This document shows positions 34,586 to 59,606 of a stretch of 64,000 bases of DNA, piece after piece. Every line of letters begins with the position of its first letter. Positions within the stretch are counted from its first letter, which is position 1. The notes under the pieces were generated by a model. That model was not told the DNA's origin and ran no database searches. It saw only the letters and a list, made by a program, of their open reading frames with translations. Location of the stretch: positions 186,001 through 250,000 of IMG/VR virus record IMGVR_UViG_3300044712_001255; one strand, written 5' to 3'. The translations under genes were made by a program, and so were the position numbers.

Positions 34586-34963
34586 CTAAGGTACCACACC
34601 AGACGGCTTGAGTGCATCAGGGTTGACTGGATATTCTGCCCAGTGGATTTCTCCCTCAGCTGTTTCAACAGCGCTCTTGTATTGGCTCTCGAGGGCCTCG
34701 ACGTTCTTTTCGAGGGCCAGAATGGTGGTTTCCACATCTTCTCCCTCTTCCAATTGTTTGGCACCAAACCGCGTATCGGCAAGCAGCCGTCGCCCGTCGA
34801 CGACCCGCTCGAGGGTGTCAATGACCGTAAAAGGAACGCCGATATCTGTGAGGGCTGTCTTGTATCCGTTATATTCTGCGCGAAGCGTGGGGTCGTCAAG
34901 GGTAAGTGTGTACCTGTCCTGGGCGCTGCGTAAGATGTCCGAGAGGTCTAAAACGTGTCTCAT
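34586..34963 (-). CDS. hypothetical protein (leaderless)
   Basis: Perfect TATAAT-ggattc-ATG at MRHVLD. Confidence 0.65.
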   Translation of the reverse strand: MRHVLDLSDILRSAQDRYTLTLDDPTLRAEYNGYKTALTDIGVPFTVIDTLERVVDGRRLLADTRFGAKQLEEGEDVETTILALEKNVEALESQYKSAVETAEGEIHWAEYPVNPDALKPSGVVP

Positions 34964-35080
34964 GAATCCATTATATAGCATATGCAGGAAGGTGGACCAT
35001 TGGATACGGTGGGACATGAGGCAATCATGGTACGCCATGAGGCCGGTGAACTCAACCCTAACATGAGGTATTCTACCACC

Positions 35081-35446
35081 ATGAAGATTGGTCGCATTTA
35101 CGCTAACATCGCCGGGGATTCTCGGTATTGCCAAATGCTCGAGGTACACCTTGAGGGCAACGAGGTAACCGTGCAGATCTGGGAGACTTCTCCTGTAGGT
35201 GGCATGGACGGTCCTGGTGGCTGCTATCCGACACGCTGCAGGGTGGAACGCAAGATCGAGAACTGCACCGGCAAGGCGCTCGCTGCTGTCATCAAGGACT
35301 TCATTGGGTACTACGGTGACACCATCCGACACTACGGCAAGCCCATGAAGAACTTCATCTGGTACGGCGACGGGTGCGACAAGCTGCGAGGCTACTCTGC
35401 CAAGACTTGTCAGGTTGCACTGGACGCCAACACCCGTCAGGGGTGA
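35081..35446 (+). CDS. hypothetical protein (leaderless)
   Basis: GTGAAC-17-TATTCT-accacc-ATG. Confidence 0.7.
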   Translation: MKIGRIYANIAGDSRYCQMLEVHLEGNEVTVQIWETSPVGGMDGPGGCYPTRCRVERKIENCTGKALAAVIKDFIGYYGDTIRHYGKPMKNFIWYGDGCDKLRGYSAKTCQVALDANTRQG

Positions 35447-35451
35447 ACCCA

Positions 35452-35703
35452 ATGCCTTCCTTAATCGCTTCATTCAACTTCTACAACGCCACCCCGGCCG
35501 CACTGCGTACCGAGGTGATCAACATGGTCCGTCGCATGAGCGATTTCATCGACTGGAACAACATCTCTGCTGCTCACCGTGAGCGTGACAACATCAACAC
35601 CCTCCTCACCCAGGTGCAGGCCTCACGTCCTGACCTCCTGGACGGGCGTACCTCGACCGAGTACTTGCGGCACCTGCTCCGGCCGGTGCAACAGAGGACC
35701 TAA
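35452..35703 (+). CDS. hypothetical protein
   Basis: Follows upstream stop; C-ending codon bias. Confidence 0.6.
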   Translation: MPSLIASFNFYNATPAALRTEVINMVRRMSDFIDWNNISAAHRERDNINTLLTQVQASRPDLLDGRTSTEYLRHLLRPVQQRT

Positions 35704-35720
35704 CAGGGTAAAACCAAACC

Positions 35721-35954
35721 ATGGACAACGGAAGCAACAACGGCAACGACGGCAAGCAAATGCCGGTCACCATCACGGTGGCTGGTCCTGGCACCCTGAC
35801 CAACTGGTCGATTGCCAAGGAGATTGCTGCCCTCCTCGAGGGTCTCAACGCTAACGTCACCGTGAAGTTCAACAAGAGTCCTCGCATCGACATCGGGACC
35901 GCCCAGTGCATCCAGCGCTCCGCGGTCACGGTGCAAATCACCAACGAAAACTAA
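35721..35954 (+). CDS. hypothetical protein (leaderless)
   Basis: TAAAAC-caaacc-ATG. Confidence 0.65.
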   Translation: MDNGSNNGNDGKQMPVTITVAGPGTLTNWSIAKEIAALLEGLNANVTVKFNKSPRIDIGTAQCIQRSAVTVQITNEN

Positions 35955-36065
35955 GGTAACAGATTGCGGTGGGTGAGTGTAGAACGAACCCCACCATGGT
36001 AGAACAGAACAGTCAACGGCAACCAAGCCAACCAACATCAACCAAGTAGAAAGAAGAGAAATCAA

Positions 36066-36806
36066 ATGACCGACATCAACACCTCCACCGTTTCCGAGAC
36101 CGCTTCCCTCACCGACATCGACGCTGCTCTCGCCAAGGCCAAGTCGGCCAAGCCCGGCCGTGTCGCCAAGCCCGCCAAGGTGGCCACCGAGTCCACCGAG
36201 GCTCCTGCAACTCCCACCGAGCCCAAGACCAAGCGCCCGGTGAAGTCGGAGGAGGAGAAGGCGGCCGAGCTGCAGGCTCGGAAGGATGCCGCTGCGGCCC
36301 GGAAGGCCGAGAAGGCGGTGGTTCGGGAGGGCAAGCTGAAGGAGCTCGAGGCTGTGAAGGCCGAGAAGAAGGCCGCTCGGGCTGCCAAGAAGGAGGCTCG
36401 GCTGGCGGGTCTCGCCAACCGCACTCCCCACCTCGCCAAGGTCGAGAAGGCGGCTGCACGGCTCCCCTCCATCTCCGAGGCTGAGCAGGGTCTGATCGAC
36501 GCTGTCATCGCCCTCGGTGCGGAGAACGCTTCGAAGGTGATCGCCCGGATCGAGCACTCCCTCCGCGAGGTGCAGACCAAGGCGTCCCTCGGTCGCAAGC
36601 TGACGGTCGGCCAGGTGGTCACCATCACCTCGGGTCCCGCCGCTTACCTCGGCGCCACCGGCACGGTTGTCAAGGTGCAGCGGATCCGCTGCCTGGTCGA
36701 GGTCCCCGGTCACACCAAGCCGGCCTACGTCTTCACCGCGGATTGCACCCCGGTCACCGGTGAGGCCTCCATCGAGGCCACCGAGTCGACTGCGGTCGCG
36801 GTCTGA
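36066..36806 (+). CDS. Lys/Ala-rich histone-H1-like protein with C-terminal KOW/SH3 domain
   Basis: AKAKSAKPGRVAKPAK and AEKKAARAAKKEAR tracts; LTVGQVVTITSGPAAYLGATGTVVKV KOW motif; very strong codon bias. Confidence 0.7.
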   Translation: MTDINTSTVSETASLTDIDAALAKAKSAKPGRVAKPAKVATESTEAPATPTEPKTKRPVKSEEEKAAELQARKDAAAARKAEKAVVREGKLKELEAVKAEKKAARAAKKEARLAGLANRTPHLAKVEKAAARLPSISEAEQGLIDAVIALGAENASKVIARIEHSLREVQTKASLGRKLTVGQVVTITSGPAAYLGATGTVVKVQRIRCLVEVPGHTKPAYVFTADCTPVTGEASIEATESTAVAV

Positions 36807-36833
36807 GAAACAGCAACACCAACAAGGAGGTAA

Positions 36834-36853
36834 GGCCCTGGGAAACCGGGGCC
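36834..36853 (+). terminator. GC hairpin after the histone-like gene
   Basis: GGCCCTGG-GAAA-CCGGGGCC; U-tract weak. Confidence 0.5.
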
Positions 36854-36914
36854 ACACCCGTTTAAACAGAGACGAGTTGCACGATCGATCGTCCGTGACG
36901 CTCGCGAGGGAAAA

Positions 36915-37070
36915 ATGTATACTGACGAAACGGCAGATTTCTTTTTCGAGTATTCAGAAGCTGAACACATCGTAGTTGGAATGCCACTTTGGTTTCGTGG
37001 TACGTCGTGGCGTGTCGTTAGGAAACGTTGCAGTCACGATGGTATTTGGTTAACACTGACTGCTTGGTGA
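36915..37070 (+). CDS. 51-aa protein, SH3-like pattern (below ORF-track cutoff)
   Basis: EAEHIVVGMPLWFRGTSWRVV; its TGA lies in the next -35. Confidence 0.55.
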   Translation: MYTDETADFFFEYSEAEHIVVGMPLWFRGTSWRVVRKRCSHDGIWLTLTAW

Positions 37071-37101
37071 AGCTCGTCCTCAACAGGAATATATTGAGAC
37101 C

Positions 37102-37500
37102 ATGGAAAATATTCAAGTCACCATCCTCCCCCACCACGAGAACGGCTTCAAGGCCTCGCACATCTGGCTCGATCGCGATCACCCCGCTCGCGCAAAGCTC
37201 ACCAACGACAACGGTCCGAGCTGGGTGCATTGCCCGCTGCGTGGGTTGAAGAAGGAGCACTGGGACAAGGAAGTGTTCGTCGACGGCAAATGGAAGCCCG
37301 CCACACTCACCCGGTGGACCGTGAAGACTGTTGTCGTCACCCTCACCCTCGAGGTGAATTCTGGTGCCGTGGCAGACGACATCGTGAACTCAGTCGCGGC
37401 TCCCGACAGCGATTTCATCGCTAACATCCACGCTTTCTTCAACGAAGGTTACAGTGAGAACGTTGTCAACATCACTGCCGTCGATTCTGAGATGCTGTGA
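37102..37500 (+). CDS. hypothetical protein (leaderless)
   Basis: TATATT-gagacc-ATG. Confidence 0.7.
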   Translation: MENIQVTILPHHENGFKASHIWLDRDHPARAKLTNDNGPSWVHCPLRGLKKEHWDKEVFVDGKWKPATLTRWTVKTVVVTLTLEVNSGAVADDIVNSVAAPDSDFIANIHAFFNEGYSENVVNITAVDSEML

Positions 37501-37532
37501 CAATCCACTCATAGAAGGGTATACTAAAGACC

Positions 37533-37916
37533 ATGGCAAGTCAACTGATCAAGGTCATCTTTTCAGACTCCACCACGTTCTTCCTCTCACCCAATGCGCC
37601 GGCACGGCGGTTCACCTCCGAGGCCGGGTGGGAGTACGGTACCATTCAGGAACGCATCTTCATCAAGGATGACTTCCAGGTGTGGAACGGCGAGGACTGG
37701 GTTCCTGCCCGCCGTACACCCGCGAAGACTAAGGTGCGGCGCAAGTTTGCGGTTGAGGTGGAGTTCGATGTGGACGGTGATCCCACTGACGAGGACGATG
37801 AGGATGTTCGCCTCAAGATTCAAGGAATTGAGATGTCAATGGTTGACGCCATTTCTGGCTGCGCTGATGACAACAAACTGACAGTGCTCACCATGGACCA
37901 CGGTCCCGCTCTGTGA
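37533..37916 (+). CDS. hypothetical protein (leaderless)
   Basis: TATACT-aaagacc-ATG. Confidence 0.7.
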   Translation: MASQLIKVIFSDSTTFFLSPNAPARRFTSEAGWEYGTIQERIFIKDDFQVWNGEDWVPARRTPAKTKVRRKFAVEVEFDVDGDPTDEDDEDVRLKIQGIEMSMVDAISGCADDNKLTVLTMDHGPAL

Positions 37917-37947
37917 CGATCGTCAGCGGGCGAGATAGAGTGGGACC

Positions 37948-38247
37948 ATGGCAAAGAAGCTCCCTGGCATCCCGCTCTACAAGGCGGCTGACATCGACTG
38001 GCATCTCGACACAAAGCCCGTCCAGGGCGTGGTTGAGATCTCCACACTCACTCGCAACAACGCACCCAGCCAGAATTGGAAGACGCGCATCTACCCGGAC
38101 GCGGCTGACATCGGGTTTCACGTCATCGGGCGTACCCGCACCCTCCTGTTCACGCTCATCGACACTGACCAGACCCATGAGGAGACTCTTGCCTGGCACT
38201 TCCGCAATGACGAGACCGGCATCGTGCTCACTGTGTTGAACGACTGA
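37948..38247 (+). CDS. hypothetical protein (leaderless)
   Basis: TAGAGT-gggacc-ATG. Confidence 0.7.
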   Translation: MAKKLPGIPLYKAADIDWHLDTKPVQGVVEISTLTRNNAPSQNWKTRIYPDAADIGFHVIGRTRTLLFTLIDTDQTHEETLAWHFRNDETGIVLTVLND

Positions 38248-38267
38248 AGAAAGGGTATACTGAGACC

Positions 38268-38768
38268 ATGGAAACCAACTCAATCGAAACCATCGCTTCC
38301 CCTGCCCTCTCCACGCTTGCGAAGGCAAACCCCACTCGCGCGGAGCTGATTGACGTCATCATCGACGAGATCGATGCAAAGCTCCAAGCGGCAAATAACG
38401 CTATCAACGCCCGTCTTGAGGAACTCGAGAAGGTGGAGTTCACCGCCGAGGAATGCGCAAACTCTCTCAAGGACGTGAAATACACGTTGGGATCTTACTC
38501 AGGCGCATTGCGTATGAACCTGGGCCGTGGCATGGATCTTGTCGTGGATACGCAGGATGCAAAGGTGTTTGCCGTAGCTCAGGAAATGAAGGAACTCCGA
38601 AAGCAGCAAAACAACATTCGTCACCACAAGTGTCTTGTCGAGCAGCCTCGCAAGATCAAGGCTTACATCACGAAGCGCCTTCTGGAGCAGTCCAAGGATG
38701 GGTGTACTCTTCTCGAGGCACTCAAGAACATCGCTAACACGTTCACGGCATCAACTCCCATCGAGTGA
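38268..38768 (+). CDS. hypothetical coiled-coil protein (leaderless)
   Basis: TATACT-gagacc-ATG. Confidence 0.7.
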   Translation: METNSIETIASPALSTLAKANPTRAELIDVIIDEIDAKLQAANNAINARLEELEKVEFTAEECANSLKDVKYTLGSYSGALRMNLGRGMDLVVDTQDAKVFAVAQEMKELRKQQNNIRHHKCLVEQPRKIKAYITKRLLEQSKDGCTLLEALKNIANTFTASTPIE

Positions 38769-38799
38769 AGGGCAGCTATGGGGGGGATAGAGTGGAATC

Positions 38800-39051
38800 A
38801 TGGTAAAACTCCACATCAATGAAGACGGTTTCTTCGCGATCCTGTACAAGGACGCGGGGGTAGACGACCCTAACAATTCGCTTGATTGCTCGAGTACACT
38901 AACGGAAACACGTGAAGAAGCGTTGAAGTCGCTTGTCGAAAACCGCTCTAAGGTTGCCCAGTTTCTGGAGAAGCGCATTGCACGTGACCAGGCAGAGCTC
39001 GCTGCTGTCAAGGCAGCGTCAATCGATGTGGTCGTGGACATAGTAAGGTAG
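38800..39051 (+). CDS. hypothetical protein (leaderless)
   Basis: TAGAGT-ggaatc-ATG. Confidence 0.7.
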   Translation: MVKLHINEDGFFAILYKDAGVDDPNNSLDCSSTLTETREEALKSLVENRSKVAQFLEKRIARDQAELAAVKAASIDVVVDIVR

Positions 39052-39060
39052 ATTGCTATC

Positions 39061-39606
39061 ATGAAACCAATCAAGACTCCACACGTTCTCACCCTCACCT
39101 CTCCTTCCGCGGTGTCCCTCTGGAAGGGCGAGTTCCTCGGCCAGCTCAGCGACGGCATGTGGGAGAACACCCGTCCGCTCGATCACTGGCGCTTCTGGCA
39201 CCACTGCGACGTCGTCCTGGGTGCGGTGAACAACCTCGACTTCGCCCTGGACAACTGGGAGCGCCCTCGCAAGGTGGGTTACAACTTCGCTGCACTCATC
39301 CCGATCGTCGGCGACCGGATGCTCAAGTGTGGTCGCTTCGGCAAGGCTCTGCCTGAGCTCTTGCGCCACGAGCTTGGGGGTTGCATCCTCGACGGGATGC
39401 CTGACACCCTCGAGGAGTTCACCACCAATCATGCCAAGCGTGGTGACATGCCGCGATATGCTGCTGCGGTCTACGAGATGGTCACCCTCGAGCAAGCTGC
39501 ACGGTACTACGCTACCGCCTACACGATGAAGGAGATGCGCGAGGACATCGAGCGCATCAAGACTGCGCTCCGGTCCGCCAATCCGAAGTCTTCCTTCAGG
39601 GGCTAA
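39061..39606 (+). CDS. hypothetical protein (leaderless)
   Basis: -10 TAGATT begins with the upstream gene's TAG stop. Confidence 0.7.
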   Translation: MKPIKTPHVLTLTSPSAVSLWKGEFLGQLSDGMWENTRPLDHWRFWHHCDVVLGAVNNLDFALDNWERPRKVGYNFAALIPIVGDRMLKCGRFGKALPELLRHELGGCILDGMPDTLEEFTTNHAKRGDMPRYAAAVYEMVTLEQAARYYATAYTMKEMREDIERIKTALRSANPKSSFRG

Positions 39607-39718
39607 CATCCCACCCACGTTCCCTCACGAGGGTCCCTCACGTTGAGGATGGGGTAACCCCTATCCCGCTTGGGGGATTCTCACGTGGGCCGTGAGAGCC
39701 CGATGCGGCGCGGGCGGG
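39607..39718. repeat. dispersed palindromic intergenic element, copy A
   Basis: CCCTCACG motifs; core GGGGTAACCCCTATCCC is the reverse complement of the copy B core. Confidence 0.7.
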
Positions 39719-39737
39719 AAAGGAATATACAGAGATC

Positions 39738-40022
39738 ATGAACGCAAAGAAGACGAAAGTCAAGTTGTTGAAAGCCAAGTCGCTCTACGCCGTCGTGGGG
39801 TATGCCACTACGGGATCAGGAACACTTACCTATCCCGAGGACTTTGATTTTGTGGGTGTCTTCCAGAGTTCTGGTGCTGCGCAAAAGTGTGCTGACCAGA
39901 AGAACAAGGAAGTCATTGAAGAGAATGAAATCGAGTATGATGATGACGATTGTCTCGAAGAAGCGTTGATGAGCTGTGGCGCGATGTGCTACGACGTCGT
40001 CGCGCTCCCGTTCATGGGGTGA
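39738..40022 (+). CDS. hypothetical protein (leaderless)
   Basis: TATACA-gagatc-ATG. Confidence 0.7.
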   Translation: MNAKKTKVKLLKAKSLYAVVGYATTGSGTLTYPEDFDFVGVFQSSGAAQKCADQKNKEVIEENEIEYDDDDCLEEALMSCGAMCYDVVALPFMG

Positions 40023-40024
40023 CC

Positions 40025-40231
40025 ATGAAAATCGTGGGCGCAGGTAATCTACGAGTAGGGATGAGAATCCGAAACGGGTTTGGCATCACCGCGACTGTCA
40101 CGGAGATCGAAGCTCCAAGTGATGAAAGTGATGGTCGTAGCCACATCGTGGTCGATTCTGGTCGCGATGGAGTGAACTCTGGCACCGGGTGGTGGATGAC
40201 ATACGTCCTTGAGCGGTGGGAACTGCTGTGA
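40025..40231 (+). CDS. hypothetical SH3-like protein
   Basis: AGNLRVGMRI...TATVTEI. Confidence 0.55.
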   Translation: MKIVGAGNLRVGMRIRNGFGITATVTEIEAPSDESDGRSHIVVDSGRDGVNSGTGWWMTYVLERWELL

Positions 40232-40262
40232 AAGTCTTGACCTACTGAGATATACTCGAATC

Positions 40263-40505
40263 ATGGCAAAGACCACTGAAGACATCGCCCAACTCGAGTT
40301 CAACACGCGAGGAATCGACTTCCTGGCACCGTGTTGCGAGATTTGTGGCTGCACGATGAGCAAGTCAGTGCAGAAGTGGTGGGTGGAATGGGAGGGAGCA
40401 CCAGAAGGTGATTGGCCTCGCTTTCACCCAGACTGCCTTGACGCGCAGATCGGCAAAGAGAAGTGCGACGGCGTTCCTTACACTGATGTATTCGCGTTCT
40501 CGTGA
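40263..40505 (+). CDS. small Zn-finger-like protein (leaderless)
   Basis: CEIC...HPDC; TATACT-cgaatc-ATG. Confidence 0.65.
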   Translation: MAKTTEDIAQLEFNTRGIDFLAPCCEICGCTMSKSVQKWWVEWEGAPEGDWPRFHPDCLDAQIGKEKCDGVPYTDVFAFS

Positions 40506-40520
40506 GGGTAGAAAAGAATC

Positions 40521-40748
40521 ATGGCAAACAAAATGATCGTTCCCCCGTACATCGCTCAGATCTGCTACCGCGAGGGTGAGCCCATCCTCTCGACGGTGAC
40601 GTTCCTCGAGAGGTCAGACGGCATGTTCTTTGCCGAGGCAGCTCACGACTTCATGCCTACCGAGCAGACCGTCTGCACACTCGAGCAGGCTCAGACCATC
40701 TACACCCGCCTAATGGCGAACGGCTTCATCCTCCCGGGTGTGGCTTGA
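40521..40748 (+). CDS. hypothetical protein (leaderless)
   Basis: TAGAAA-agaatc-ATG. Confidence 0.65.
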   Translation: MANKMIVPPYIAQICYREGEPILSTVTFLERSDGMFFAEAAHDFMPTEQTVCTLEQAQTIYTRLMANGFILPGVA

Positions 40749-40772
40749 TAGTTGAAGGGGTATACTAAGACC

Positions 40773-41732: not shown

Positions 41733-41761
41733 CGGAATCATCCTGGAGGTATAACAAGACC

Positions 41762-42127: not shown

Positions 42128-42158
42128 AGGCAACGGCGGGACGTGATAGACTGAGACC

Positions 42159-51382: not shown

Positions 51383-51396
51383 GATATTCTACGACC

Positions 51397-52596: not shown

Positions 52597-52614
52597 GCGA
52601 GGTAGAACTAGACC

Positions 52615-52818: not shown

Positions 52819-52852
52819 ATGTCTCCCAACGATGAGGTAATCTAAAACTAAC

Positions 52853-53032: not shown

Positions 53033-53044
53033 GGTAAGACCATA

Positions 53045-53272: not shown

Positions 53273-53306
53273 TGAAAGACTTGCTTCGTTGTGGTAAGGT
53301 GAGACC

Positions 53307-53534
53307 ATGATCGTAGATGAATTGATGGTTGACGCCAAGGGAGTCATCTGGCACGCGGAGAGCTTTGAGAATTACGTCTGCATCTCACGTCGTGAACCCC
53401 CGCCAAGTCAGTGGCCCAATGATCCTTCCACGTTTATCGCGGTTGAGATTCAGGACGGTGAGGTACACCTGTACCAACGTGTGCCAACGGACGTTGTCCA
53501 GAAGGCGCTGGAACTCTGGACTTGGCGACCGTGA
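53307..53534 (+). CDS. hypothetical protein (leaderless)
   Basis: TAAGGT-gagacc-ATG. Confidence 0.65.
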   Translation: MIVDELMVDAKGVIWHAESFENYVCISRREPPPSQWPNDPSTFIAVEIQDGEVHLYQRVPTDVVQKALELWTWRP

Positions 53535-53568
53535 GTGAAAGACTCTGAGCTCTGAGGTAGTATAAACC

Positions 53569-53802
53569 ATGGAAAACGAGCAACTCGTAATTGTTATCAA
53601 GGGTGACTGCGCCTCGGGCAAAACCACGCTGGCACTCGCCTTGCACGACTTCCTTTTGTCACGGGGTTTCACCAACGTTGATGTGAATGACTACGACATC
53701 GACAATGATATCTGTTATCCCGCTCTTCAAGAGTCTCGGATGAATGCGATCAAGGATCGTAAGGTCACCATCAACACAATACAGGGACGTCTTTCTTGGT
53801 GA
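53569..53802 (+). CDS. 77-aa protein with Walker A motif (leaderless)
   Basis: IVIKGDCASGKTTLA. Confidence 0.65.
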   Translation: MENEQLVIVIKGDCASGKTTLALALHDFLLSRGFTNVDVNDYDIDNDICYPALQESRMNAIKDRKVTINTIQGRLSW

Positions 53803-53833
53803 AAGACCCGCCTCACTGAGGTAAAGTGAGACC

Positions 53834-53998
53834 ATGACGAAGACAGAGGCTGTTCAACAACTCGCCCAGGTGAAGCGGATCCTAGCTCGACTCGCAGAGT
53901 GTGCTGAGTTGATACCCGCTGAACATTTTGACATCATCGAGCTGCAACGTCACGCGGACCAGGTCGAGATCGATCCTGAAGAGTGTGAAGAGGGGTGA
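53834..53998 (+). CDS. hypothetical protein (leaderless)
   Basis: TAAAGT-gagacc-ATG. Confidence 0.6.
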   Translation: MTKTEAVQQLAQVKRILARLAECAELIPAEHFDIIELQRHADQVEIDPEECEEG

Positions 53999-54001
53999 CA
54001 C

Positions 54002-54217
54002 ATGACGCAGAAGACAGTATCGAAGACCACGGTGACCTGCGACAGGTGTAACGCGGAGGGTGAGCCCTTCAGGGGTCCCTTCGCGAATGGTCACACTACC
54101 ATCACTGCAGACCACAGCGTTCGAAGCTGTCAGGGTGATTCTGGTGGGTGGAAGACGACGTACGACCTTTGTGCGACTTGTCAGGAGTTGTTCCTCCAGT
54201 TCATGGACGGCAAGTGA
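54002..54217 (+). CDS. small Zn-finger protein
   Basis: VTCDRC...DLCATC. Confidence 0.65.
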   Translation: MTQKTVSKTTVTCDRCNAEGEPFRGPFANGHTTITADHSVRSCQGDSGGWKTTYDLCATCQELFLQFMDGK

Positions 54218-54248
54218 AAGTCGCGTGGGGACAGGGTAGAACTAGATC

Positions 54249-54476
54249 ATGGAAACCAACATCGAACTCTACACGAAGTACCTCGCTCAGATCGGTCGCC
54301 GGATAACACCTCCTACTGGTAAGCTTACCGTCTGGGTGGTGCAGTCTGTCATTGCATTCAAGGGACTCGGCGGTGGCATTGAGTTCAGGCTCGAGCTAAC
54401 CGCCAGTGATTGGACCGAGGCACGCTTGACACTTGAGGAGCTAGGCGATCTGGAACGTGGTGTAATCTCCTTTTGA
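54249..54476 (+). CDS. hypothetical protein (leaderless)
   Basis: TAGAAC-tagatc-ATG. Confidence 0.65.
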   Translation: METNIELYTKYLAQIGRRITPPTGKLTVWVVQSVIAFKGLGGGIEFRLELTASDWTEARLTLEELGDLERGVISF

Positions 54477-54493
54477 GAAGGGTAAGGTGAATC

Positions 54494-54736
54494 ATGTCGG
54501 ACAGAACATGTTTGGGCGATCCCGAGTTCAGCGTCTCCGTTGGACGAGATGACATCGACGTCACCTGCTACGTGGACGCCGGTCGTGTCAACGTCCAAGT
54601 GGACAACTACCGTGGTTCTTTCTACGGCAATGAATCATGCGACATCAACCTGAGTGAAGATCAGGCTCGTGAGCTGCGTGACGCCCTGAACGATTTCCTG
54701 GAGCTGAGGGCTGCCAGGGCAAGCATCCCGGCGTGA
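54494..54736 (+). CDS. hypothetical protein (leaderless)
   Basis: TAAGGT-gaatc-ATG. Confidence 0.65.
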   Translation: MSDRTCLGDPEFSVSVGRDDIDVTCYVDAGRVNVQVDNYRGSFYGNESCDINLSEDQARELRDALNDFLELRAARASIPA

Positions 54737-54825
54737 CCCACGGGTCCCTCACGTGAGACTCCCACAGGTGGGATAGGGGTTACCACCTTGGGCGAGAGGG
54801 ATTCTCGTGAGGGACCCTCTCGCCA
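54737..54825. repeat. dispersed palindromic intergenic element, copy B
   Basis: GGGTCCCTCACG...GGGATAGGGGTTACC...CGTGAGGGACCC (12-bp terminal inverted repeat). Confidence 0.7.
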
Positions 54826-54860
54826 GTGCAGGAACGGCGAGAGAAAGGTATAAACAGACC

Positions 54861-55187
54861 ATGGCGAGCAAGAAGATCAAGTTCCCGCATGACTTTGCGA
54901 ATCGTCCCGATAGCGAGCGACACCGAGGGATGGCCCGGTACGTCTTGGTGAAAGAGCCACTCGAGGCTCACATCACAGTTCAGCGCGCGGACGGCAATAC
55001 GGATGCCGTGTTCGTCTCCGTGTGGATCGGCAAGGGTGCCGTGGGCGAAGGGTGGGGTGGGTACGGTGCCATCACCCACCAGGAAGACCTGCTGCCCATC
55101 ATGAACAAGGCTCGTGAAGACATTCTCGAGTACATGCGTAAGGAAGTGGTGAAGTGGAAGGCAACGCTCAACGCTGCGAAGGTGTGA
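54861..55187 (+). CDS. hypothetical protein (leaderless)
   Basis: TATAAA-cagacc-ATG. Confidence 0.7.
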   Translation: MASKKIKFPHDFANRPDSERHRGMARYVLVKEPLEAHITVQRADGNTDAVFVSVWIGKGAVGEGWGGYGAITHQEDLLPIMNKAREDILEYMRKEVVKWKATLNAAKV

Positions 55188-55218
55188 CGTACTCAATACG
55201 TTGGGGTATACTCTGACC

Positions 55219-55466
55219 ATGGCAGGTATCTCAACGGTGAGCGCCTCTGCATGCCGGGCAACGAGGCTGAGGCTGCGTTCCGCCTTGTCACCTCCCGCCT
55301 AGTGGCCGAGATGGTGGAGAATGAAGAGGAGATCGACATCGATTGCTGTGATGAGTGTTCTTCTTGGACTGTGACTGACCGCCGCTGCTCGTGCGGCAAT
55401 CGTCGGATGGAACTCACCTGGACTGGTACCTTCGAGGACCCTACCTACTACGCCGAGGCTTACTGA
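55219..55466 (+). pseudogene. Zn-finger gene whose leaderless ATG is out of frame (1-nt deletion or sequence error)
   Basis: TATACT-ctgacc-ATG GC AGG TAT CTC...; downstream frame encodes CCDEC...CSC. Confidence 0.5.
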
Positions 55467-55505
55467 CACTGTGATCTTCCGGCTTCCTTAGCTTATACTG
55501 AGACC

Positions 55506-55670
55506 ATGGAAAACCTGATCACCGAGAGCGGACGCTCTGATCTCTCACTCATCAACCGCGTCCGCACCTTGCTGGGATACGGGCTGAATGATGCCGAGAT
55601 TGCGGGCATCCTCAACGTCTCTCGCGGCGATGCGTTCCTCATCATCACTGCCACCAAGATTCTCGAGTGA
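55506..55670 (+). CDS. small HTH-like protein (leaderless)
   Basis: GYGLNDAEIAGILNVSRGDA. Confidence 0.6.
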   Translation: MENLITESGRSDLSLINRVRTLLGYGLNDAEIAGILNVSRGDAFLIITATKILE

Positions 55671-55701
55671 TTCAAACGAGCGCGAAGGGTATAAAGAGAC
55701 C

Positions 55702-56115
55702 ATGGTAAACACCAAAGAGTTCCCCAACGTCGGCGATACCATCACGATCCACAACTGCAACATCGGTAAGGAGTACGACAAAAAGAACTGGGCTTGCACG
55801 CAGCGTGCCCGGAAGGGCAACGCCCTCACCATGAAGGTGACCAAGACGGCGTGGAATGGTGGAGGTCAGGCTCCCGACACCAACTTCCCCAACGGGTGGC
55901 ACGTGACGGCGACTGTCATTGCCACGGGCGAGGTGGTCCACTTCTATCGCAAGGACACGGGTTTCTTCAATGACCACATCACTGTCGCTCCCGGTGAGAT
56001 CCGCCTCGTTGAGGCGGGTGAGGTCACCAAGGCGAATCGGCGGGCCCGCATCGCTGAGATTGATGCCGAAGTCGCTGCCCTCCAGGCCGAGAAGGCTTGC
56101 CTCATTGATCTGTGA
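55702..56115 (+). CDS. hypothetical SH3-like protein with coiled-coil tail (leaderless)
   Basis: FPNVGDTITI; TATAAA-gagacc-ATG. Confidence 0.7.
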   Translation: MVNTKEFPNVGDTITIHNCNIGKEYDKKNWACTQRARKGNALTMKVTKTAWNGGGQAPDTNFPNGWHVTATVIATGEVVHFYRKDTGFFNDHITVAPGEIRLVEAGEVTKANRRARIAEIDAEVAALQAEKACLIDL

Positions 56116-56181
56116 GCCCTCACGAGGGCCTCGCGTCAGCGGGATAGGGGAACCTACCTTTGGCGCTTGAGGCCCTCACGT
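56114..56181. repeat. dispersed palindromic intergenic element, copy C
   Basis: GAGCCCTCACGAGGGC...GGGATAGGGGAACC...GGCCCTCACG. Confidence 0.65.
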
Positions 56182-56231
56182 AGCGAACGGTGACCGGTGT
56201 TTCTCCAGCGGGGGAAGGATATACTCTGATC

Positions 56232-56414
56232 ATGGAACAAACCACGCTCGACAAGATGAAGGTTCTCGGTGAGATGTTGGTGAAGGACAAGGCGACCCCT
56301 GCGCAGTGCCAGGCACTGGCCAAGGATGTTGCCAAGATCACGAACTACAGTTATGCAGACGTGAAGCGCCTGCTCAACTCAGTCTTCCTCATGCACGGAA
56401 TGCCGCTGATCTGA
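56232..56414 (+). CDS. small helical protein, paralog of 47887..48075
   Basis: MEQTTLDKMKVLGE...LAKDVAK...LMHGMPLI. Confidence 0.75.
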   Translation: MEQTTLDKMKVLGEMLVKDKATPAQCQALAKDVAKITNYSYADVKRLLNSVFLMHGMPLI

Positions 56415-56434
56415 CAACGGGATAAGGTGAGACC

Positions 56435-56563
56435 GTGGCAAGTTTCTTCAAGCGACTCGATGACAACAACTGGCTCATGTGCGGGGTGCTACTCACCGGC
56501 ATCGTTGTCATCGTGTGTGTCTTCGCGTACTTCGGCGTTGAAATGCCCCTCGTCATTCGGTGA
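56435..56563 (+). CDS. small membrane peptide (leaderless, GTG start)
   Basis: TAAGGT-gagacc-GTG; TM helix. Confidence 0.55.
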   Translation: MASFFKRLDDNNWLMCGVLLTGIVVIVCVFAYFGVEMPLVIR

Positions 56564-56594
56564 CGTGGCGCGGCAAGAAGGGTAAAACAAGACC

Positions 56595-56906
56595 ATGGCA
56601 AAGACCAAGGCTGAGATTGCAGAGACCCGGAAACTGAAGCGCATGGCGAAGCAGGTTGCTGCGCAGCTTGCACGTGAAGAGGCAGCTGTTGCAGAGCAGG
56701 CGGCACGAGAAGCGCGCCTCGCAAACATCTGCACGCTTGCGCAGCTGCGTACCTTCAATGAGATCCCCTACGACGGTATCTGGCCTGCGGATGAGGGCAC
56801 CCTCGGTGAGTACGTCCTGCGCGAGGAGGTGGAAGCGCTGGTGAAGAACCTCGAGAAGCGCATCGCAGAGGCGCAGCGGCTGCCGTTCCCCGACGAGATC
56901 CGGTGA
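56595..56906 (+). CDS. hypothetical coiled-coil protein (leaderless)
   Basis: TAAAAC-aagacc-ATG. Confidence 0.7.
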   Translation: MAKTKAEIAETRKLKRMAKQVAAQLAREEAAVAEQAAREARLANICTLAQLRTFNEIPYDGIWPADEGTLGEYVLREEVEALVKNLEKRIAEAQRLPFPDEIR

Positions 56907-56936
56907 CGCCAACGAACCACTGGGTATAACAAGACC

Positions 56937-57179
56937 ATGGCAAGGAACCTCAATCACCAGGTCGCAAACGTAGTCCTCTCCCTCCCATGCTGCGTCATGT
57001 CCACCATGGTGGCGTTCGTGGCAATCTTCATCACAGTGGCGGGGGTCACGGGACTCGCCTTCAGCATCCTCCTCGGTGTGGACTGGAACATGGGGTGTGC
57101 CCTTGGCATGGTTGCCTGGTTCGGCGTCTACGTCATCGTGGGCCTCATCATTGAGGTGGTGAAGGCCCGCTCTCACTGA
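56937..57179 (+). CDS. membrane protein, 2 TM (leaderless)
   Basis: TATAAC-aagacc-ATG. Confidence 0.7.
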   Translation: MARNLNHQVANVVLSLPCCVMSTMVAFVAIFITVAGVTGLAFSILLGVDWNMGCALGMVAWFGVYVIVGLIIEVVKARSH

Positions 57180-57193
57180 GGTATAACAAGACC

Positions 57194-57367
57194 ATGCACG
57201 GCAAACACTACTACCACTTCACTGTCGAAGGCACCTACATGGGCAAGAAGACGACGCTCTTCATCAACGCCACGTCTCCTCTCCACGCCATGAAAGCATG
57301 GTGCCGCAAGATGAAAGCAAACATCGAACTCGTCGCGTTCAGCTACGTCAACGTGGACGGCGAGTGA
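57194..57367 (+). CDS. hypothetical protein (leaderless)
   Basis: TATAAC-aagacc-ATG; 57 aa. Confidence 0.65.
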   Translation: MHGKHYYHFTVEGTYMGKKTTLFINATSPLHAMKAWCRKMKANIELVAFSYVNVDGE

Positions 57368-57420
57368 CAGAGACTCTTCCTTAGCTTATACTGATCTCAG
57401 GTAACGGAAACAAAAACAAC

Positions 57421-57523
57421 GGCCTGCGGGTGTTGGTGGAATCTCTGCTGCAGAGGAGATGAAACCACGGAAGCATATGGCGTCTATGACGACAAGGTTT
57501 AGGTTCAAATCCTGAGCGGGTCA
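57421..57523 (+). ncRNA. tRNA-like RNA (103 nt): acceptor and T-arm intact, interior non-tRNA
   Basis: GGCCTGC/GCGGGTC-A; TTAGG-TTCAAAT-CCTGA; own promoter GTGACA-17-TATACT. Confidence 0.6.
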
Positions 57524-57578
57524 CTGTGAAGATATGATCTTCCAAGGTTATACTCTTCTTAGATACGGAAACAAACAT

Positions 57579-57717
57579 AGTCTGTTGGTGTGGATGTTCT
57601 CCGACGCTGGAGCTTGCTCCAGCATAGGGAATACACGGTCAACACACAGCGTTGAAGGCGCAAGCGCTTTCATTGAAGGCGCTGAGTCGCTAGGTTCAAA
57701 CCCTGCACAGACTACCA
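57579..57717 (+). ncRNA. tRNA-like RNA (139 nt) with encoded CCA and two long internal hairpins
   Basis: AGTCTGT/ACAGACT-A-CCA perfect acceptor; AGG-TTCAAAC-CCT T-arm; hairpins GCTGGAG-CTTG-CTCCAGC and GAAGGCGC-AA-GCGCTTTC; own promoter GTGAAG-17-TATACT. Confidence 0.7.
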
Positions 57718-57793
57718 TGCCCTGGAACGCCTCTGGAGGTGGACGGGAAGTGATATCACCCGAACGAATGAAGTTCGAATCTTCACTGGGGCA
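57718..57793 (+). tRNA. degenerate tRNA (possible GAT anticodon, pseudo-tRNA-Ile)
   Basis: TGCCCTG/CTGGGCA with one mismatch; perfect T-arm TGAAG-TTCGAAT-CTTCA; imperfect anticodon stem around GT-GAT-AT. Confidence 0.45.
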
Positions 57794-57832
57794 CTGAGTG
57801 ACAACAGACCTCCACTGAGGTACAACTGGACC

Positions 57833-58075
57833 ATGGCAAACACCTCCTACCGAGTCGAGCTCTTCAAGATCAATCCCAACGCCCAGGAGAATGACGTCTG
57901 CGGCAACGTGACCACCTCCACGTTCTCCACCCTCGAGGCTGCTCATGACTGGTTCGAGTTCTTCAAGGCTCAGTGTGTCCACGCTGACGACACTGTGGAG
58001 CTCCTCCGGGCCGAGCACGCCTCGGACGGCAGTGACGACTTGGTTGACCTCCAGGCGATTTCCTACTACCCCTGA
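57833..58075 (+). CDS. hypothetical protein (leaderless)
   Basis: TACAAC-tggacc-ATG. Confidence 0.7.
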   Translation: MANTSYRVELFKINPNAQENDVCGNVTTSTFSTLEAAHDWFEFFKAQCVHADDTVELLRAEHASDGSDDLVDLQAISYYP

Positions 58076-58113
58076 TCGGTGATCCCAACAACTCACAAGG
58101 GTATAACAAGACC

Positions 58114-58323
58114 ATGGAAAACATCTACGCGGTAACTCATATTGATTACGAGGGTACCTACTCCGTCAAGGTCTACCGCTCCGTGGTTGACGCCTTTACC
58201 AGCTTCGCTGCCATCAAACTCTACGGCAATTGATCTTTCAAGCAGCTGGTCGGTCCCTGCACCTTCGGCGAGGATGTTACTTCCTCCACCAACGTCATCC
58301 GTCAGGAGTTCAACGAGGGGTGA
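58114..58323 (+). pseudogene. leaderless gene interrupted by an in-frame TGA at 58231
   Basis: Frame continues 29 biased codons (SFKQLVGPCTFGED...) to the next TGA. Confidence 0.5.
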
Positions 58324-58336
58324 TACCTACACAGGG

Positions 58337-58550
58337 AGGGCCCCCTATCCACGTCGAAGAGTGGCACGGTGAAGGGGCCCCATGGCCCCCTGGCTACGTC
58401 GAAGAATGTGGCTAAAAGGGCCCCGTGGCAGCCCCCTTCGATAGCCCCCTAAGAGCCCCCATGTAGCCCCCTTCGTGAAGGGGGCCCCCGGCCCCCTGCT
58501 TAAACCTTTGTGGGGCCTCCCCGTGCAGCTGCCCCGCGCTTAGCCCATAC
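58337..58550. repeat. GC-rich C5/G5 run repeat region
   Basis: AGCCCCC at 58430, 58443, 58454, 58465 plus GGGGCCCCC palindromes. Confidence 0.7.
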
Positions 58551-58671
58551 GCAAATCCCGGGAAAATTTCTCAAATCCCACTCAGCCATTCTTGACGCTG
58601 CGTCTGCTATTCCACAACACCCCCCGCACAAAATTTCCCACGGGAATTTCTCACACCTATTTACTCATACC

Positions 58672-58977
58672 ATGAAGATCACTGTAAAGCAATTTAGACA
58701 ATTGATTCGAGAAGCAACGGATTCAGGTGACGATTGGTCGGGTGGGCCGTGGATCGTTGCTATGCATAATCAATATGAGGGCCTCAGTGAAATCACCTAT
58801 TTTGCAACAGGCGACGTGGCACAAAAAGAATTCAATTCACGAAAAAAGCCACAATACACTGTTGTAGCATATAGACTCACTAACGGCATGGTTTTAGATG
58901 ATTCCTCTAAATCTAAACCGACGCATGTTGCCGACGGAAGCAACGAGTTCGAAGAAGTTAACGTCGGGTGGGAATGA
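58672..58977 (+). CDS. hypothetical protein with MKITxxQxRxLIRE leader
   Basis: MKITVKQFRQLIREA; CACCTATTTA 8 nt upstream. Confidence 0.65.
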   Translation: MKITVKQFRQLIREATDSGDDWSGGPWIVAMHNQYEGLSEITYFATGDVAQKEFNSRKKPQYTVVAYRLTNGMVLDDSSKSKPTHVADGSNEFEEVNVGWE

Positions 58978-59018
58978 CGCTTGTGTAACCCGTATGGGTC
59001 TGGTGTATACTAAGACCC

Positions 59019-59606
59019 ATGAGCAACGCCCCTACATTCATGCCGCCAATCAAGTTCTGTGGTGCTGATCGACTTGAAACACTCCCAACACATGGTTTAC
59101 ATAGCTATGTCTATAGTTTCAATGGTGATCTGCCGTATCTTACGTTCAAAGATGTTCATACCTGTATAAGGGTGACACATTGTCCCGACGTGGAGTGCTC
59201 CACTTGGGACGTGAGTTATGGTGGAACTCACATCACTGTCAACAGCGAAGATGAACTTCGATTTGCGATGTTCACTTTGCGAGACGCGATGGTTGACACA
59301 TTCTGGTCTATTGCAAAAACACTTTCAAAGAATCTTGCTCGAACTGAGAGCGTTACAAGAAAATTGCAAGATGCTGATGACTCTGCGTACGTTGCAGACA
59401 AGCCTGTTCACACTCTAACGCTGCAGCTGAAATGGACGGGAGACATTTCTCCTGAAACCGCAGAAGACTGCATCATCAGTTATGTAGAGGGCGAGCATCC
59501 GGGCGCTCCCACTCATGGCCCGTTCACTGTTACCGAAGTGAACGTTGTGGAACAACATCATCACATTGATGACGATGAGACCATTGATTACATGCACAAC
59601 CGCTGA
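59019..59606 (+). CDS. hypothetical protein (leaderless)
   Basis: TATACT-aagaccc-ATG. Confidence 0.65.
   Translation: MSNAPTFMPPIKFCGADRLETLPTHGLHSYVYSFNGDLPYLTFKDVHTCIRVTHCPDVECSTWDVSYGGTHITVNSEDELRFAMFTLRDAMVDTFWSIAKTLSKNLARTESVTRKLQDADDSAYVADKPVHTLTLQLKWTGDISPETAEDCIISYVEGEHPGAPTHGPFTVTEVNVVEQHHHIDDDETIDYMHNR

What the first reader, a model, noticed from the sequence alone, without database searches (positions are those of the whole stretch)
34963..59019. More than 50 genes set up for leaderless translation, in a genome that carries its own IF-1
Seen: -10 hexamers end about 6 nt before ATG with no Shine-Dalgarno in at least 54 positions. Similar placements precede uvsE, groEL, the glycosyltransferase (16765), 26763 and the RadA-like gene. 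The PGD array instead uses SD sites and overlaps. Established: a -10 box 6-7 nt upstream places +1 on the A of ATG, and leaderless mRNAs initiate on 70S ribosomes with altered initiation-factor dependence. Inference: two translation regimes exist, and the phage infA (8660) may bias ribosomes toward phage mRNAs or replace an inactivated host factor.
Basis: partly seen in the sequence, partly recalled or inferred. Interest (0 to 1): 0.62.

Follow-up and report, generated by a model that had tools for sequence, protein, structure and literature searches.

The report
Huge-phage array of leaderless single-gene units
About 57 small genes in a row in an uncultured giant soil phage each carry their own promoter, placed so that the mRNA should begin exactly at the ATG; the layout is real and shared by related phages, but nothing ties it to the phage's own IF-1 gene.

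Summary
The window is part of a 324-kb IMG/VR phage record found in rhizosphere metagenomes. Between window 32,091 and 59,019, all on the + strand, 57 genes follow the same layout. An RTGnnn box comes first, then a 17-bp spacer (51 of 57), then GG-TAtAnT. The -10 hexamer ends exactly 6 bp before the start codon in 52 cases. A promoter matrix built without the ATG finds 79 sites genome-wide, against about 11 in shuffles; 50 have ATG at exactly +6, where about 1 is expected by chance.

The ORFs are real and almost all are unrelated ORFans, so the motif is not a copied cassette. Related phages (46-52% protein identity) have the same promoter-ATG arrays around different genes.

The geometry fits a sigma-70-type promoter that starts transcription on the A of ATG, giving leaderless mRNAs. 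No RNA data exist to prove this.

SD-led and overlapping genes also occur, so two initiation regimes do coexist. IF-1 is genuine and conserved in the clade. However, its own gene is SD-led, and another IF-1-bearing giant phage (Phosso) is SD-dominated. The proposed link between IF-1 and leaderless translation remains speculation.

The parts
32056..59606 (+). One-directional array of about 57 promoter-ATG units (single genes, a few two-gene units). ORFs have a median of 80 aa; the array is GC-rich (about 55%) relative to the rest of the genome (about 46%).
   Evidence: ORFs started by the motif ATG cover 70% of 35,081-59,606. GC by codon position is 0.574/0.398/0.688.
48909..48946 (+). Example unit: -35-like GTGACA (48909-48914), 17-bp spacer, GG + TATACT (-10, 48932-48937), discriminator aagacc, ATG at 48944.
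   Evidence: (10 of 12 match to the sigma-70 consensus).
56902..56939 (+). Example of a stop codon embedded in the next promoter. The TGA of gene 56595-56906 lies inside the GTGACG box of the unit whose ATG is at 56937.
   Evidence: Gaps of exactly 31 nt recur in about 14 consecutive pairs; this pair has a gap of 30.
35977..36806 (+). Same-class promoter that is not fused to ATG. Predicted +1 is G at 36012, followed by a 54-nt CA-rich leader and a 246-aa gene (36066-36806). This is the only array gene shared by all related phages.
57364..57533 (+). Promoter GTGACA-17-TATACT with predicted +1 at 57399, followed by about 135 nt without a start codon and a T-arm-like GGTTCAAATCC. Possibly a non-coding RNA or a long leader.
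   Evidence: No Rfam or ARAGORN hit.
31099..31969 (-). Divergent unit on the minus strand: a same-class promoter fused to the ATG of a KaiC/RadA-like ATPase (276 aa).
8660..8884 (+). infA (IF-1, 74 aa). It is preceded by an SD-like aaaggaaa, not by a fused promoter.
265..3159 (+). uvdE (265-1215) and groEL (1579-3159). Each has a TAnnnT hexamer ending 5-6 nt before ATG, from other promoter classes.
27410..27484 (-). tRNA-Met (CAT) of elongator type (G1-C72 pair, C11:G24). It is not the initiator-like tRNA, which lies outside the window.
58330..58560 (.). GC-rich run of GGGGCCCC-type palindromic repeats at the downstream end of the array. Function unknown.
   Evidence: read directly from the sequence.

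Best explanation
The region is a 27-kb, one-directional block of about 57 very small transcription units in an uncultured phage of at least 324 kb that depends on the host RNA polymerase.

Each unit has a sigma-70-type bipartite promoter: an RTGnnn box, a 17-bp spacer, and GG-TAtAnT. Its -10 hexamer ends 6 bp before ATG, with pyrimidines at -2/-1. RNA polymerase should therefore start on the A of ATG and make an mRNA with no leader (inferred).

Such mRNAs are translated by direct binding of ribosome and initiator tRNA to the 5'-terminal AUG, without a Shine-Dalgarno pairing (established for other systems, inferred here). The few second genes inside units use overlap coupling or an SD, as do most genes elsewhere in the genome.

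The genes are mostly unrelated ORFans with host-like GC-rich codons. They are probably early or host-takeover genes (inferred).

The layout is a conserved design of a phage clade. It most likely exploits a host whose ribosomes handle leaderless mRNA routinely, because at least two other promoter classes in the genome are fused to ATG in the same way.

The phage IF-1 is a real, vertically kept gene. Its most likely role is a general boost or take-over of initiation, not a switch specific to leaderless mRNA.
For: - Fixed geometry far above chance.
- No SD at a working distance, and ATG in 58 of 59 units.
- The ORFs are real: median 80 aa against 26 aa for other ATGs (p=3e-19), with strong codon-position GC periodicity.
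- Only 2 paralogous pairs among 59 proteins, and 57 of 59 without a Pfam family. The motif is therefore kept by selection, not by cassette duplication.
- No phage RNA polymerase genes were found, while an RpoD-like sigma is present.
- Relatives G006, G007, G008 and G009 share 124, 169, 17 and 17 ORFs with this genome at 45-52% identity. They have the same arrays (TAnnnT at exactly -12 in 40, 57, 26 and 25 ORFs) and a GTGCAAAG box, but share only 1-3 array proteins.
- High-scoring same-class promoters not followed by ATG still carry a purine at the equivalent +1: A, G, G, A, A, A.
- The first 36 nt of the predicted mRNAs are weakly structured (-3.1 against -7.6 and -7.0 kcal/mol, p about 1e-8) and A-rich.
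- Outside the array, 25 further genes have TAnnnT at -12, 12 of them with an extended -10 TG.
- Experimental precedent for this exact layout exists: D. radiodurans, TACACT 6-7 bp upstream of the ORF (PMC12340547).
- A phage precedent exists as well: phiYS40 (PMC3594737).
Against: - No 5'-end or expression data exist for this phage; only DNA runs hold it.
- The host is unknown, so 'the host handles leaderless mRNA' is an inference.
- There is no enrichment of terminators between units (17 found, 13.9 expected). Much of the RNA over each gene may therefore be read-through from upstream promoters, where the ATG is internal.
- The upstream box has an almost invariant G where sigma-70 promoters have T, and it reads GTGCAAAG in relatives. 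The factor that reads it (host sigma, phage sigma or an activator) is not known.
- The discriminator AGACC is conserved although it would not be transcribed, and this model does not fully explain that.
- Sixteen of 59 units have an SD-like 4-mer at -20..-12, which could serve as a weak, distant SD.
Confidence: 0.72

Rival explanations
1. The phage runs a private translation regime, and its IF-1 (perhaps with the initiator-like tRNA-Met) shifts host ribosomes toward 5'-AUG phage mRNAs or replaces an inactivated host IF-1.
For: - IF-1 is conserved in the clade that has the arrays: G007 at 56%, G008 at 60%. The three phage IF-1s form one clade (SH-aLRT 80.8).
- No IF-3 and no S21 were found in the record.
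- A tRNA-Met with initiator features lies at genome 259405-259479: a 1:72 mismatch, A11:U24 and two G-C pairs at the foot of the anticodon stem.
- A review states that IF1 and IF2 stimulate leaderless mRNA in vitro and that extra fMet-tRNA stimulates it strongly (PMC9031893).
- phiYS40 infection changes host IF2 and IF3 levels (PMC3594737).
Against: - infA is itself SD-led.
- According to the same review, IF1 is required for SD-led initiation too, and no selectivity for leaderless mRNA is reported.
- IF-1 occurs in other huge phages (PMC7162821). Phosso, which carries IF-1, is SD-dominated.
- G006 shows the arrays but no IF-1 in its 56%-complete record.
- Promoter classes that look host-like (TTGAAA/TTGAAC-17-TAnAAT) are also fused to ATG. 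This suggests the host translates such mRNAs before any phage factor is made.
Confidence: 0.13
2. The promoters are real, but most translation of array genes happens on read-through polycistronic RNA. Ribosomes would re-initiate or scan as 70S across the 12-35-nt gaps, or use the purine-rich GAGG/AAGG at -17..-13 as a distant SD. On this view the 5'-terminal AUG is a by-product of packing promoters between genes.
For: - No terminator enrichment between units.
- Gaps are short and stereotyped, with the upstream stop codon inside the next promoter: exactly 31 nt in about 14 pairs, and 12-21 nt in many others.
- An SD-like 4-mer lies at -20..-12 in 16 of 59 units.
- 70S scanning is described, and IF1 strongly stimulates it (PMC9031893).
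Against: - Packing alone does not require an exact 6-bp distance in 52 units, nor ATG in 58 of 59.
- In the same genome, SD 4-mers of SD-led genes sit at -13..-9, 3-5 nt closer to the start.
- The same fusion occurs at isolated first genes such as groEL and uvdE, and at divergent units with no upstream gene.
Confidence: 0.1
3. The conserved GGTAtAnT-AGACC-AUG acts at the RNA level. It would be a non-SD ribosome-binding signal, or a site for an endoribonuclease that cuts long transcripts just before AUG to release leaderless mRNAs. On this view it is not a promoter.
For: - The discriminator AGACC is conserved in all relatives although a +1 at the A would leave it untranscribed.
- There are no terminators between units.
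Against: - The bipartite layout has an unconserved spacer of exactly 17 bp to an upstream box. That is the signature of RNA polymerase holoenzyme binding and has no RNA-level rationale.
- The consensus scan rates several units 9-10 of 12 against TTGACA-17-TATAAT.
- Same-class sites also precede leaders and a non-coding stretch.
Confidence: 0.05

Closest known systems
The '-10 motif adjacent to the ORF' expression pattern of Deinococcus-Thermus (also inferred for Actinobacteria)
   Same: A TAnnnT hexamer (TACACT in D. radiodurans, TATACT here) lies 6-7 bp before the start codon, no SD is present, and SD-led genes coexist in the same genome. In D. radiodurans the hexamer was shown to act as a classical -10 that produces leaderless mRNA, and a -35 placed 17 bp upstream enhanced it (PMC12340547).
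   Different: Here the pattern is in a phage. About 57 units are packed head to tail in 27 kb, with the stop codon of one gene inside the promoter of the next. The upstream box is phage-clade-specific (RTG, GTGCAAAG in relatives), and nothing has been tested experimentally.
Thermus phage phiYS40 middle and late transcripts
   Same: A large lytic phage that uses host RNA polymerase and makes most of its middle and late mRNAs without leaders. It is accompanied by a change in initiation-factor balance (secondary source PMC3594737).
   Different: phiYS40 alters host IF2 and IF3 levels, whereas this phage encodes IF-1. The primary paper (Sevostyanova et al. 2007) is not held in the library and could not be read. 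The host and the timing of expression are unknown here.
Predicted leaderless SigA promoters of Cluster O mycobacteriophages
   Same: [quoted passage not shown]
   Different: Only a few such promoters per genome head long operons there, rather than a promoter for nearly every gene.
Translation genes of huge phages (IF1, IF3, S21, S1, tRNAs)
   Same: IF-1, 46 tRNAs and a tmRNA sit in a genome of more than 300 kb. IF1 in huge phages was reported by Al-Shayeb et al. 2020 (PMC7162821).
   Different: That work notes canonical SD sites in most phages and links non-SD genomes to S1. It does not describe promoter-ATG fusion arrays. No IF-3 or S21 was found here.
T4-type early and middle promoter clusters
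   Same: Many closely spaced promoters drive small ORFan genes in a T4-like-terminase phage (TerL at 44% and 38% to Microcystis and Flavobacterium phages). A non-canonical box near -35 recalls the MotA-box logic (from my own knowledge).
   Different: T4 early and middle mRNAs are leadered and SD-dependent (from my own knowledge). I did not search for MotA or AsiA homologues.

Membership tests
Leaderless gene (promoter -10 fused to the start codon) | TAnnnT-type hexamer ending 6-7 bp (tolerance 5-8) upstream of the start codon | tested here: met
   52 units at 6 bp and 5 more at 5 or 7 bp. Genome-wide, ATG at +6 in 50 of 79 matrix hits.
Leaderless gene (promoter -10 fused to the start codon) | No Shine-Dalgarno sequence at a working distance | tested here: met
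   1 of 59 units has GGAG, GAGG or AGGA inside -13..-4. SD-led genes of the same genome peak at -13..-9.
Leaderless gene (promoter -10 fused to the start codon) | Start codon is AUG | tested here: met
   58 ATG and 1 GTG among 59 units.
Leaderless gene (promoter -10 fused to the start codon) | Mapped primary 5' end at or within a few nt of the start codon | not testable with these tools
   Only two DNA runs (assembled contigs) hold the sequence, and no RNA run does.
Sigma-70-type bipartite promoter | Two hexamers separated by 17 +/- 1 bp | tested here: met
   Spacer is 17 bp in 51 units, 18 bp in 2 and 16 bp in 1, out of 57.
Sigma-70-type bipartite promoter | -35 hexamer resembling TTGACA | tested here: inconclusive
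   The TG is invariant, but the first base is G in 48 of 57 units. Hexamers include GTGAAA, GTGAAG, GTGACG and GTGACA. Relatives have GTGCAAAG. Only a few units reach 9-10 of 12 in the consensus scan.
Sigma-70-type bipartite promoter | Read by host core RNA polymerase with a sigma-70-family factor | tested here: inconclusive
   No single-subunit or multisubunit RNA polymerase genes are in the record. The beta and beta' searches had working controls; the single-subunit search did not ring in any control genome. An RpoD-like sigma is encoded, with an intact region 2 and a degenerate region 4.2. Which sigma reads the array is unknown.
Bacterial IF-1 (infA) | S1-like IF-1 domain covering a protein of about 72 aa, above the curated equivalog cut-off | tested here: met
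   PF01176 over residues 10-72, E=1.6e-20. TIGR00008 at 90.6 bits against a cut-off of 61.15. 51-64% identity to cellular IF-1.
Bacterial IF-1 (infA) | Binds the 30S A site and acts in initiation | not testable with these tools
   I did not run a complex prediction, because a pass would not discriminate between the models.
phiYS40-type strategy (leaderless phage mRNAs plus a shifted initiation-factor balance) | Change in host initiation-factor levels or activity during infection | not testable with these tools
   The phage is uncultured and its host unknown.

The most novel reading that the evidence does not exclude
A clade of giant soil phages runs its own leaderless expression system. Dozens of promoter-ATG units would be read through a clade-specific GTG(C)AAAG box, and their 5'-AUG mRNAs would be favoured over host SD-led mRNAs by a phage-encoded set: IF-1, an initiator-like tRNA-Met, and possibly the RpoD-like sigma with a rebuilt region 4.2. 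This would be a combined transcription-translation take-over module rather than a simple reflection of host habits.
Probability: 0.13. Interest if true: 0.8.

Novelty: new variant of a known kind. Interest (0 to 1): 0.55.

Why it matters
Leaderless initiation is usually studied on a handful of model mRNAs. Here a natural genome offers about 57 near-identical promoter-ATG junctions in front of unrelated coding sequences, and the design is conserved across a phage clade whose array genes have turned over.

If the starts are confirmed, the array would be useful in several ways:
- As a ready-made library for asking what, beyond a 5' AUG, makes a leaderless mRNA work.
- As a test of how exact start-site choice is enforced. 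The CC at -2/-1 and the conserved AGACC discriminator are the obvious candidates.
- As an example of extreme promoter packing, with the stop codon of one gene inside the -35 of the next.

The array genes use GC3-rich codons while the rest of the genome is AT-richer and comes with 46 phage tRNAs. This hints at a timed hand-over from host to phage decoding capacity.

The practical value is limited for now because the phage and its host are uncultured.

Tried and rejected
- Close relatives in the GenBank phage collection by DNA: none.
- Relatives through two protein probes in IMG/VR (a 319-aa array protein and the sigma): none. A DNA pattern of the promoter-ATG junction did find them.
- Host identification failed by every route tried:
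  - The IF-1 scan of cellular genomes gives 51-64% identity spread over Chloroflexota, Actinomycetota, Gemmatimonadota, Spirochaetota and others.
  - In the IF-1 tree the phage sequences sit on long branches, nearest to Actinomycetota by path but without support.
  - tmRNA DNA against five genomes gave only chance matches.
  - UvdE's nearest Atlas clusters are viral.
  - TerL points only to distant T4-like phages of cyanobacteria and Flavobacterium.
- RNA evidence: no RNA run holds the phage. Laying the two DNA runs gave identical contigs and no variants, so there was no microdiversity to test for conservation.
- Cassette duplication as the source of the repeats is rejected. Only 2 of 59 protein pairs are related, and the spacers are not conserved.
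- Phage-encoded RNA polymerase as the reader of the motif is rejected for the multisubunit type. It was not found for the single-subunit type either, but that search had no positive control.
- Terminators between units are not enriched.
- A loose regex for '+1 purine' at non-ATG sites was too noisy to use. Only the six high-scoring matrix hits are cited.
- A stop-to-ATG gap analysis in relatives used an ORF heuristic prone to false stops and is not relied on.
- Pfam scans of IF-1's neighbours and other window genes found nothing relevant.
- The primary phiYS40 paper is not held in the library.

Full report
WHAT THE SEQUENCE IS

The window is bases 186,001-250,000 of a single 324,468-bp IMG/VR virus record. 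The record is linear and CheckV estimates it 86% complete. Two rhizosphere metagenome runs from two studies hold the sequence. Both are DNA runs, and the second carries it without a single difference.

The genome encodes a T4-like large terminase. Its best cultured matches are Microcystis phage Mel-JY01 at 44% and Flavobacterium phage 'immuto' at 38%. It also encodes GroEL, UvdE and IF-1, 46 tRNAs, a tmRNA and a tRNA with anticodon UUA, and an RpoD-like sigma factor. No phage RNA polymerase was found. Transcription must therefore use the host core enzyme.

CHECKING THE OBSERVATION

Printing the 45 nt before every + strand ORF start in 34.9-59.7 kb shows one repeated layout: GTGa, about 19 variable bases, GGTAtAnT, gAGACC, then ATGG.

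I built a weight matrix from these sites and scored only positions -40 to -7, so neither the ATG nor the discriminator contributes.
- It finds 79 sites in the genome at a threshold where shuffled genomes give 7-13.
- In 50 of the 79, an ATG begins exactly 6 nt after the hexamer.
- The neighbouring distances 5, 7 and 9 nt hold 4, 3 and 4 sites, and all others 0-2.
- About one such ATG would be expected by chance.

I then inspected 60 starts by hand.
- 57 units have the hexamer 5-7 nt from the start codon, 52 of them at exactly 6.
- 51 have exactly 17 bp between the hexamer and an upstream xTG hexamer.
- The first base of that upstream hexamer is G in 48 and A in 8.
- GG or GA precedes the -10 in 46.
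- The commonest -10 hexamers are TATACT (12 units) and TATAAC (8 units).

All 57 units are on the + strand between 32,091 and 59,019. One further unit points the other way, onto a KaiC/RadA-like ATPase at 31,929.

ARE THE ORFS GENES, AND ARE THE REPEATS JUST COPIES?

ORFs opened by the motif ATG have a median length of 80 aa, against 26 aa for all other + strand ATGs in the region (p=3e-19). They cover 70% of the region and show coding periodicity, with GC of 0.574/0.398/0.688 by codon position.

Only two pairs among the 59 proteins are related to each other. Fifty-seven have no Pfam family; the exceptions are a trypsin-like protease and a P-loop NTPase. The spacers between the promoter boxes are not conserved. 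The motif is therefore maintained in front of unrelated genes, which argues for function rather than cassette duplication.

ANATOMY

Consecutive genes are separated by stereotyped short gaps. About 14 gaps are exactly 31 nt, many others are 12-21 nt, and the few two-gene units overlap by 4 nt. The upstream gene's TGA often lies inside the next promoter's GTGA box or in the tGAGG just before the -10.

Intrinsic terminators are not enriched (17 found, 13.9 expected). Read-through from upstream units is therefore likely.

Only 1 of 59 units has an SD 4-mer at -13..-4, while 16 have one at -20..-12. The start codon is ATG in 58 of 59 units. Position -1 is C in 55 of 59, with CC at -2/-1 in 40, and the second codon is mostly GCA, GAA or GAC.

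The first 36 nt of the predicted mRNAs fold weakly: -3.1 kcal/mol against -7.6 and -7.0 for internal windows of the same genes (p about 1e-8). They are also A-rich, 32% against 22%.

A few promoters of the same class are not fused to ATG. Their predicted +1 positions are 32,366 (30-nt leader), 36,012 (54-nt leader) and 57,399 (about 135 nt with no start codon). Among the six high-scoring non-ATG sites, the base at the equivalent +1 is always a purine. This fits a start site at that position.

THE REST OF THE GENOME

Outside the array, TAnnnT sits exactly at -12 before 25 of 254 ATG genes, against 2-8 at other offsets. SD 4-mers peak at -13..-9 before many others. Twelve of the 25 carry TG at -15/-14, which marks an extended -10 class, and several of these precede genes in the minus-strand block near the right end of the genome.

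Leaderless and SD-led initiation therefore coexist genome-wide, and at least two or three promoter classes are fused to ATG. This is the main reason to think the host's ribosomes accept such mRNAs without phage help.

The phage sigma keeps the -10-reading region 2 almost identical to RpoD. Its region 4.2 recognition helix, however, is replaced and cut short. I infer, without a test, that this sigma serves the extended -10 class and that the GTG-box class is read earlier. The sigma operon itself follows a GTG-box promoter with a short leader.

RELATIVES

Searching IMG/VR with the junction pattern GGTATAMYNAGACCATGG found four records.
- G006: 190.7 kb, sharing 124 ORFs with this genome at mean 52% identity.
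- G007: 278 kb, sharing 169 ORFs at 46%.
- G008 and G009: 58 kb and 35.6 kb. Their arrays look near-identical to each other.

Each has an array of the same units. TAnnnT at exactly -12 occurs in 40, 57, 26 and 25 ORFs respectively, against single digits to about 20 at other offsets. In G007, G008 and G009 the upstream box is longer and stronger, GTGCAAAGTtca.

Only 1-3 array proteins are shared with this genome. One shared pair, 59% identical, keeps the fused promoter while the spacer has diverged. The sigma is conserved in G006, G007 and G009, and IF-1 in G007 and G008.

In every genome the array ORFs are much richer in GC3 (0.67-0.84) than long ORFs elsewhere (0.38-0.58). This fits early genes tuned to a GC-rich host, with later genes served by the phage's own tRNAs. 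That reading is an inference.

THE IF-1 QUESTION

The gene is a bona fide infA and the three phage copies group together, so it is an old, maintained gene of the clade. Several points count against a specific link to leaderless translation.
- It is preceded by an SD-like aaaggaaa, not a fused promoter.
- IF1 in huge phages is already on record (PMC7162821).
- In the GenBank phage set, IF-1 occurs in Lak megaphages, other metagenomic huge phages and Sinorhizobium phage Phosso.
- Running the same analysis on 400 kb of Phosso gives a large SD peak (about 110 at -11/-10) and only a small bump at -12 (22 against about 13). IF-1 carriage therefore does not go with a leaderless-dominated genome.
- The review literature says IF1 and IF2 stimulate leaderless translation in vitro, IF3 at high level inhibits it, and extra initiator tRNA stimulates it strongly. 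It also says IF1 is required for SD-led initiation and stimulates 70S scanning (PMC9031893).

No IF-3 or S21 gene is present. One of the three tRNA-Met genes, outside the window at genome 259,405-259,479, has initiator hallmarks.

COMPARISON WITH WHAT IS KNOWN

The layout is the same as the experimentally validated '-10 motif 6-7 bp upstream of the ORF' of Deinococcus radiodurans (PMC12340547). It also matches predicted leaderless SigA promoters in mycobacteriophages (PMC4351075). A phage that makes most middle and late mRNAs leaderless, phiYS40, is on record (PMC3594737), whereas phiKZ shows none (PMC8244752).

What I did not find described:
- The scale and packing: a promoter for nearly every gene, about 57 in 27 kb, with stop codons inside the next promoter.
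- The clade-specific upstream box.
- Conservation of the design across phages whose array genes differ.

I therefore rate it a new variant of a known kind.

LIMITS

No transcript data exist, the host is unknown, and all functional statements about start sites, timing and factor use are inferences from geometry and comparison.

Noticed in passing
window 32,000-59,100 against the rest of the genome; same in G006, G007, G008 and G009: Array ORFs use GC3-rich codons (0.67-0.84), while long ORFs elsewhere in the same genomes are at 0.38-0.58. The array is a compositional island (about 55% GC against about 46%). This may mean early genes are tuned to a GC-rich host and later genes are served by phage tRNAs.
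   Followed up: partly
outside the window: genome 257,926-283,308, 49,473-49,828 and 313,007-313,079: The genome carries 46 tRNA genes covering all 20 amino acids, a one-piece tmRNA (tag ANDNATVLRAAA), and a tRNA with anticodon UUA that would read the TAA stop codon.
   Followed up: no
outside the window: genome 259,405-259,479: A tRNA-Met with initiator hallmarks: a U1.U72 mismatch, A11:U24 and two G-C pairs at the foot of the anticodon stem. The other two CAT tRNAs look like elongator or Ile2 types.
   Followed up: partly
outside the window: genome 263,717-264,532 (L007:1342-2157): An RpoD-like sigma of 271 aa. Region 2 is nearly identical to RpoD, but the region 4.2 recognition helix is replaced and truncated. 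It is conserved in G006, G007 and G009. A separate 93-aa ORF with a sigma region-4-like HTH lies at genome 12,247-12,342 on the minus strand.
   Followed up: partly
window 36,066-36,806: A 246-aa protein with no family match. It is the only array gene shared by all four relatives (36-61% identity), and it is expressed from a same-class promoter through a 54-nt CA-rich leader instead of a fused ATG.
   Followed up: no
window 57,364-57,533: A near-consensus promoter (GTGACA-17-TATACT) followed by about 135 nt with no start codon and a T-arm-like GGTTCAAATCC. ARAGORN and Rfam report nothing here.
   Followed up: partly
window about 58,330-58,560: A cluster of GC-rich GGGGCCCC-type palindromic repeats in a non-coding stretch at the downstream end of the array.
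   Followed up: no
window 47,887-48,317 and 56,232-56,563: A duplicated two-gene module whose first proteins are 66% identical. In the second copy the downstream gene starts with GTG at the fused position and is only 42 aa long.
   Followed up: no
window 29,588-30,277 (minus strand); outside the window, genome 104,251-108,441: A GIY-YIG/NUMOD3 homing-endonuclease-like gene lies in the minus-strand block. The ribonucleotide reductase large subunit carries an HNH-endonuclease insertion.
   Followed up: no
G006 loci L097 and L101: In the relative G006, several high-scoring units are followed by ATC instead of ATG at the fused position; ATCGGACAG occurs twice. These could be promoters of non-coding RNAs or of leadered genes.
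   Followed up: no
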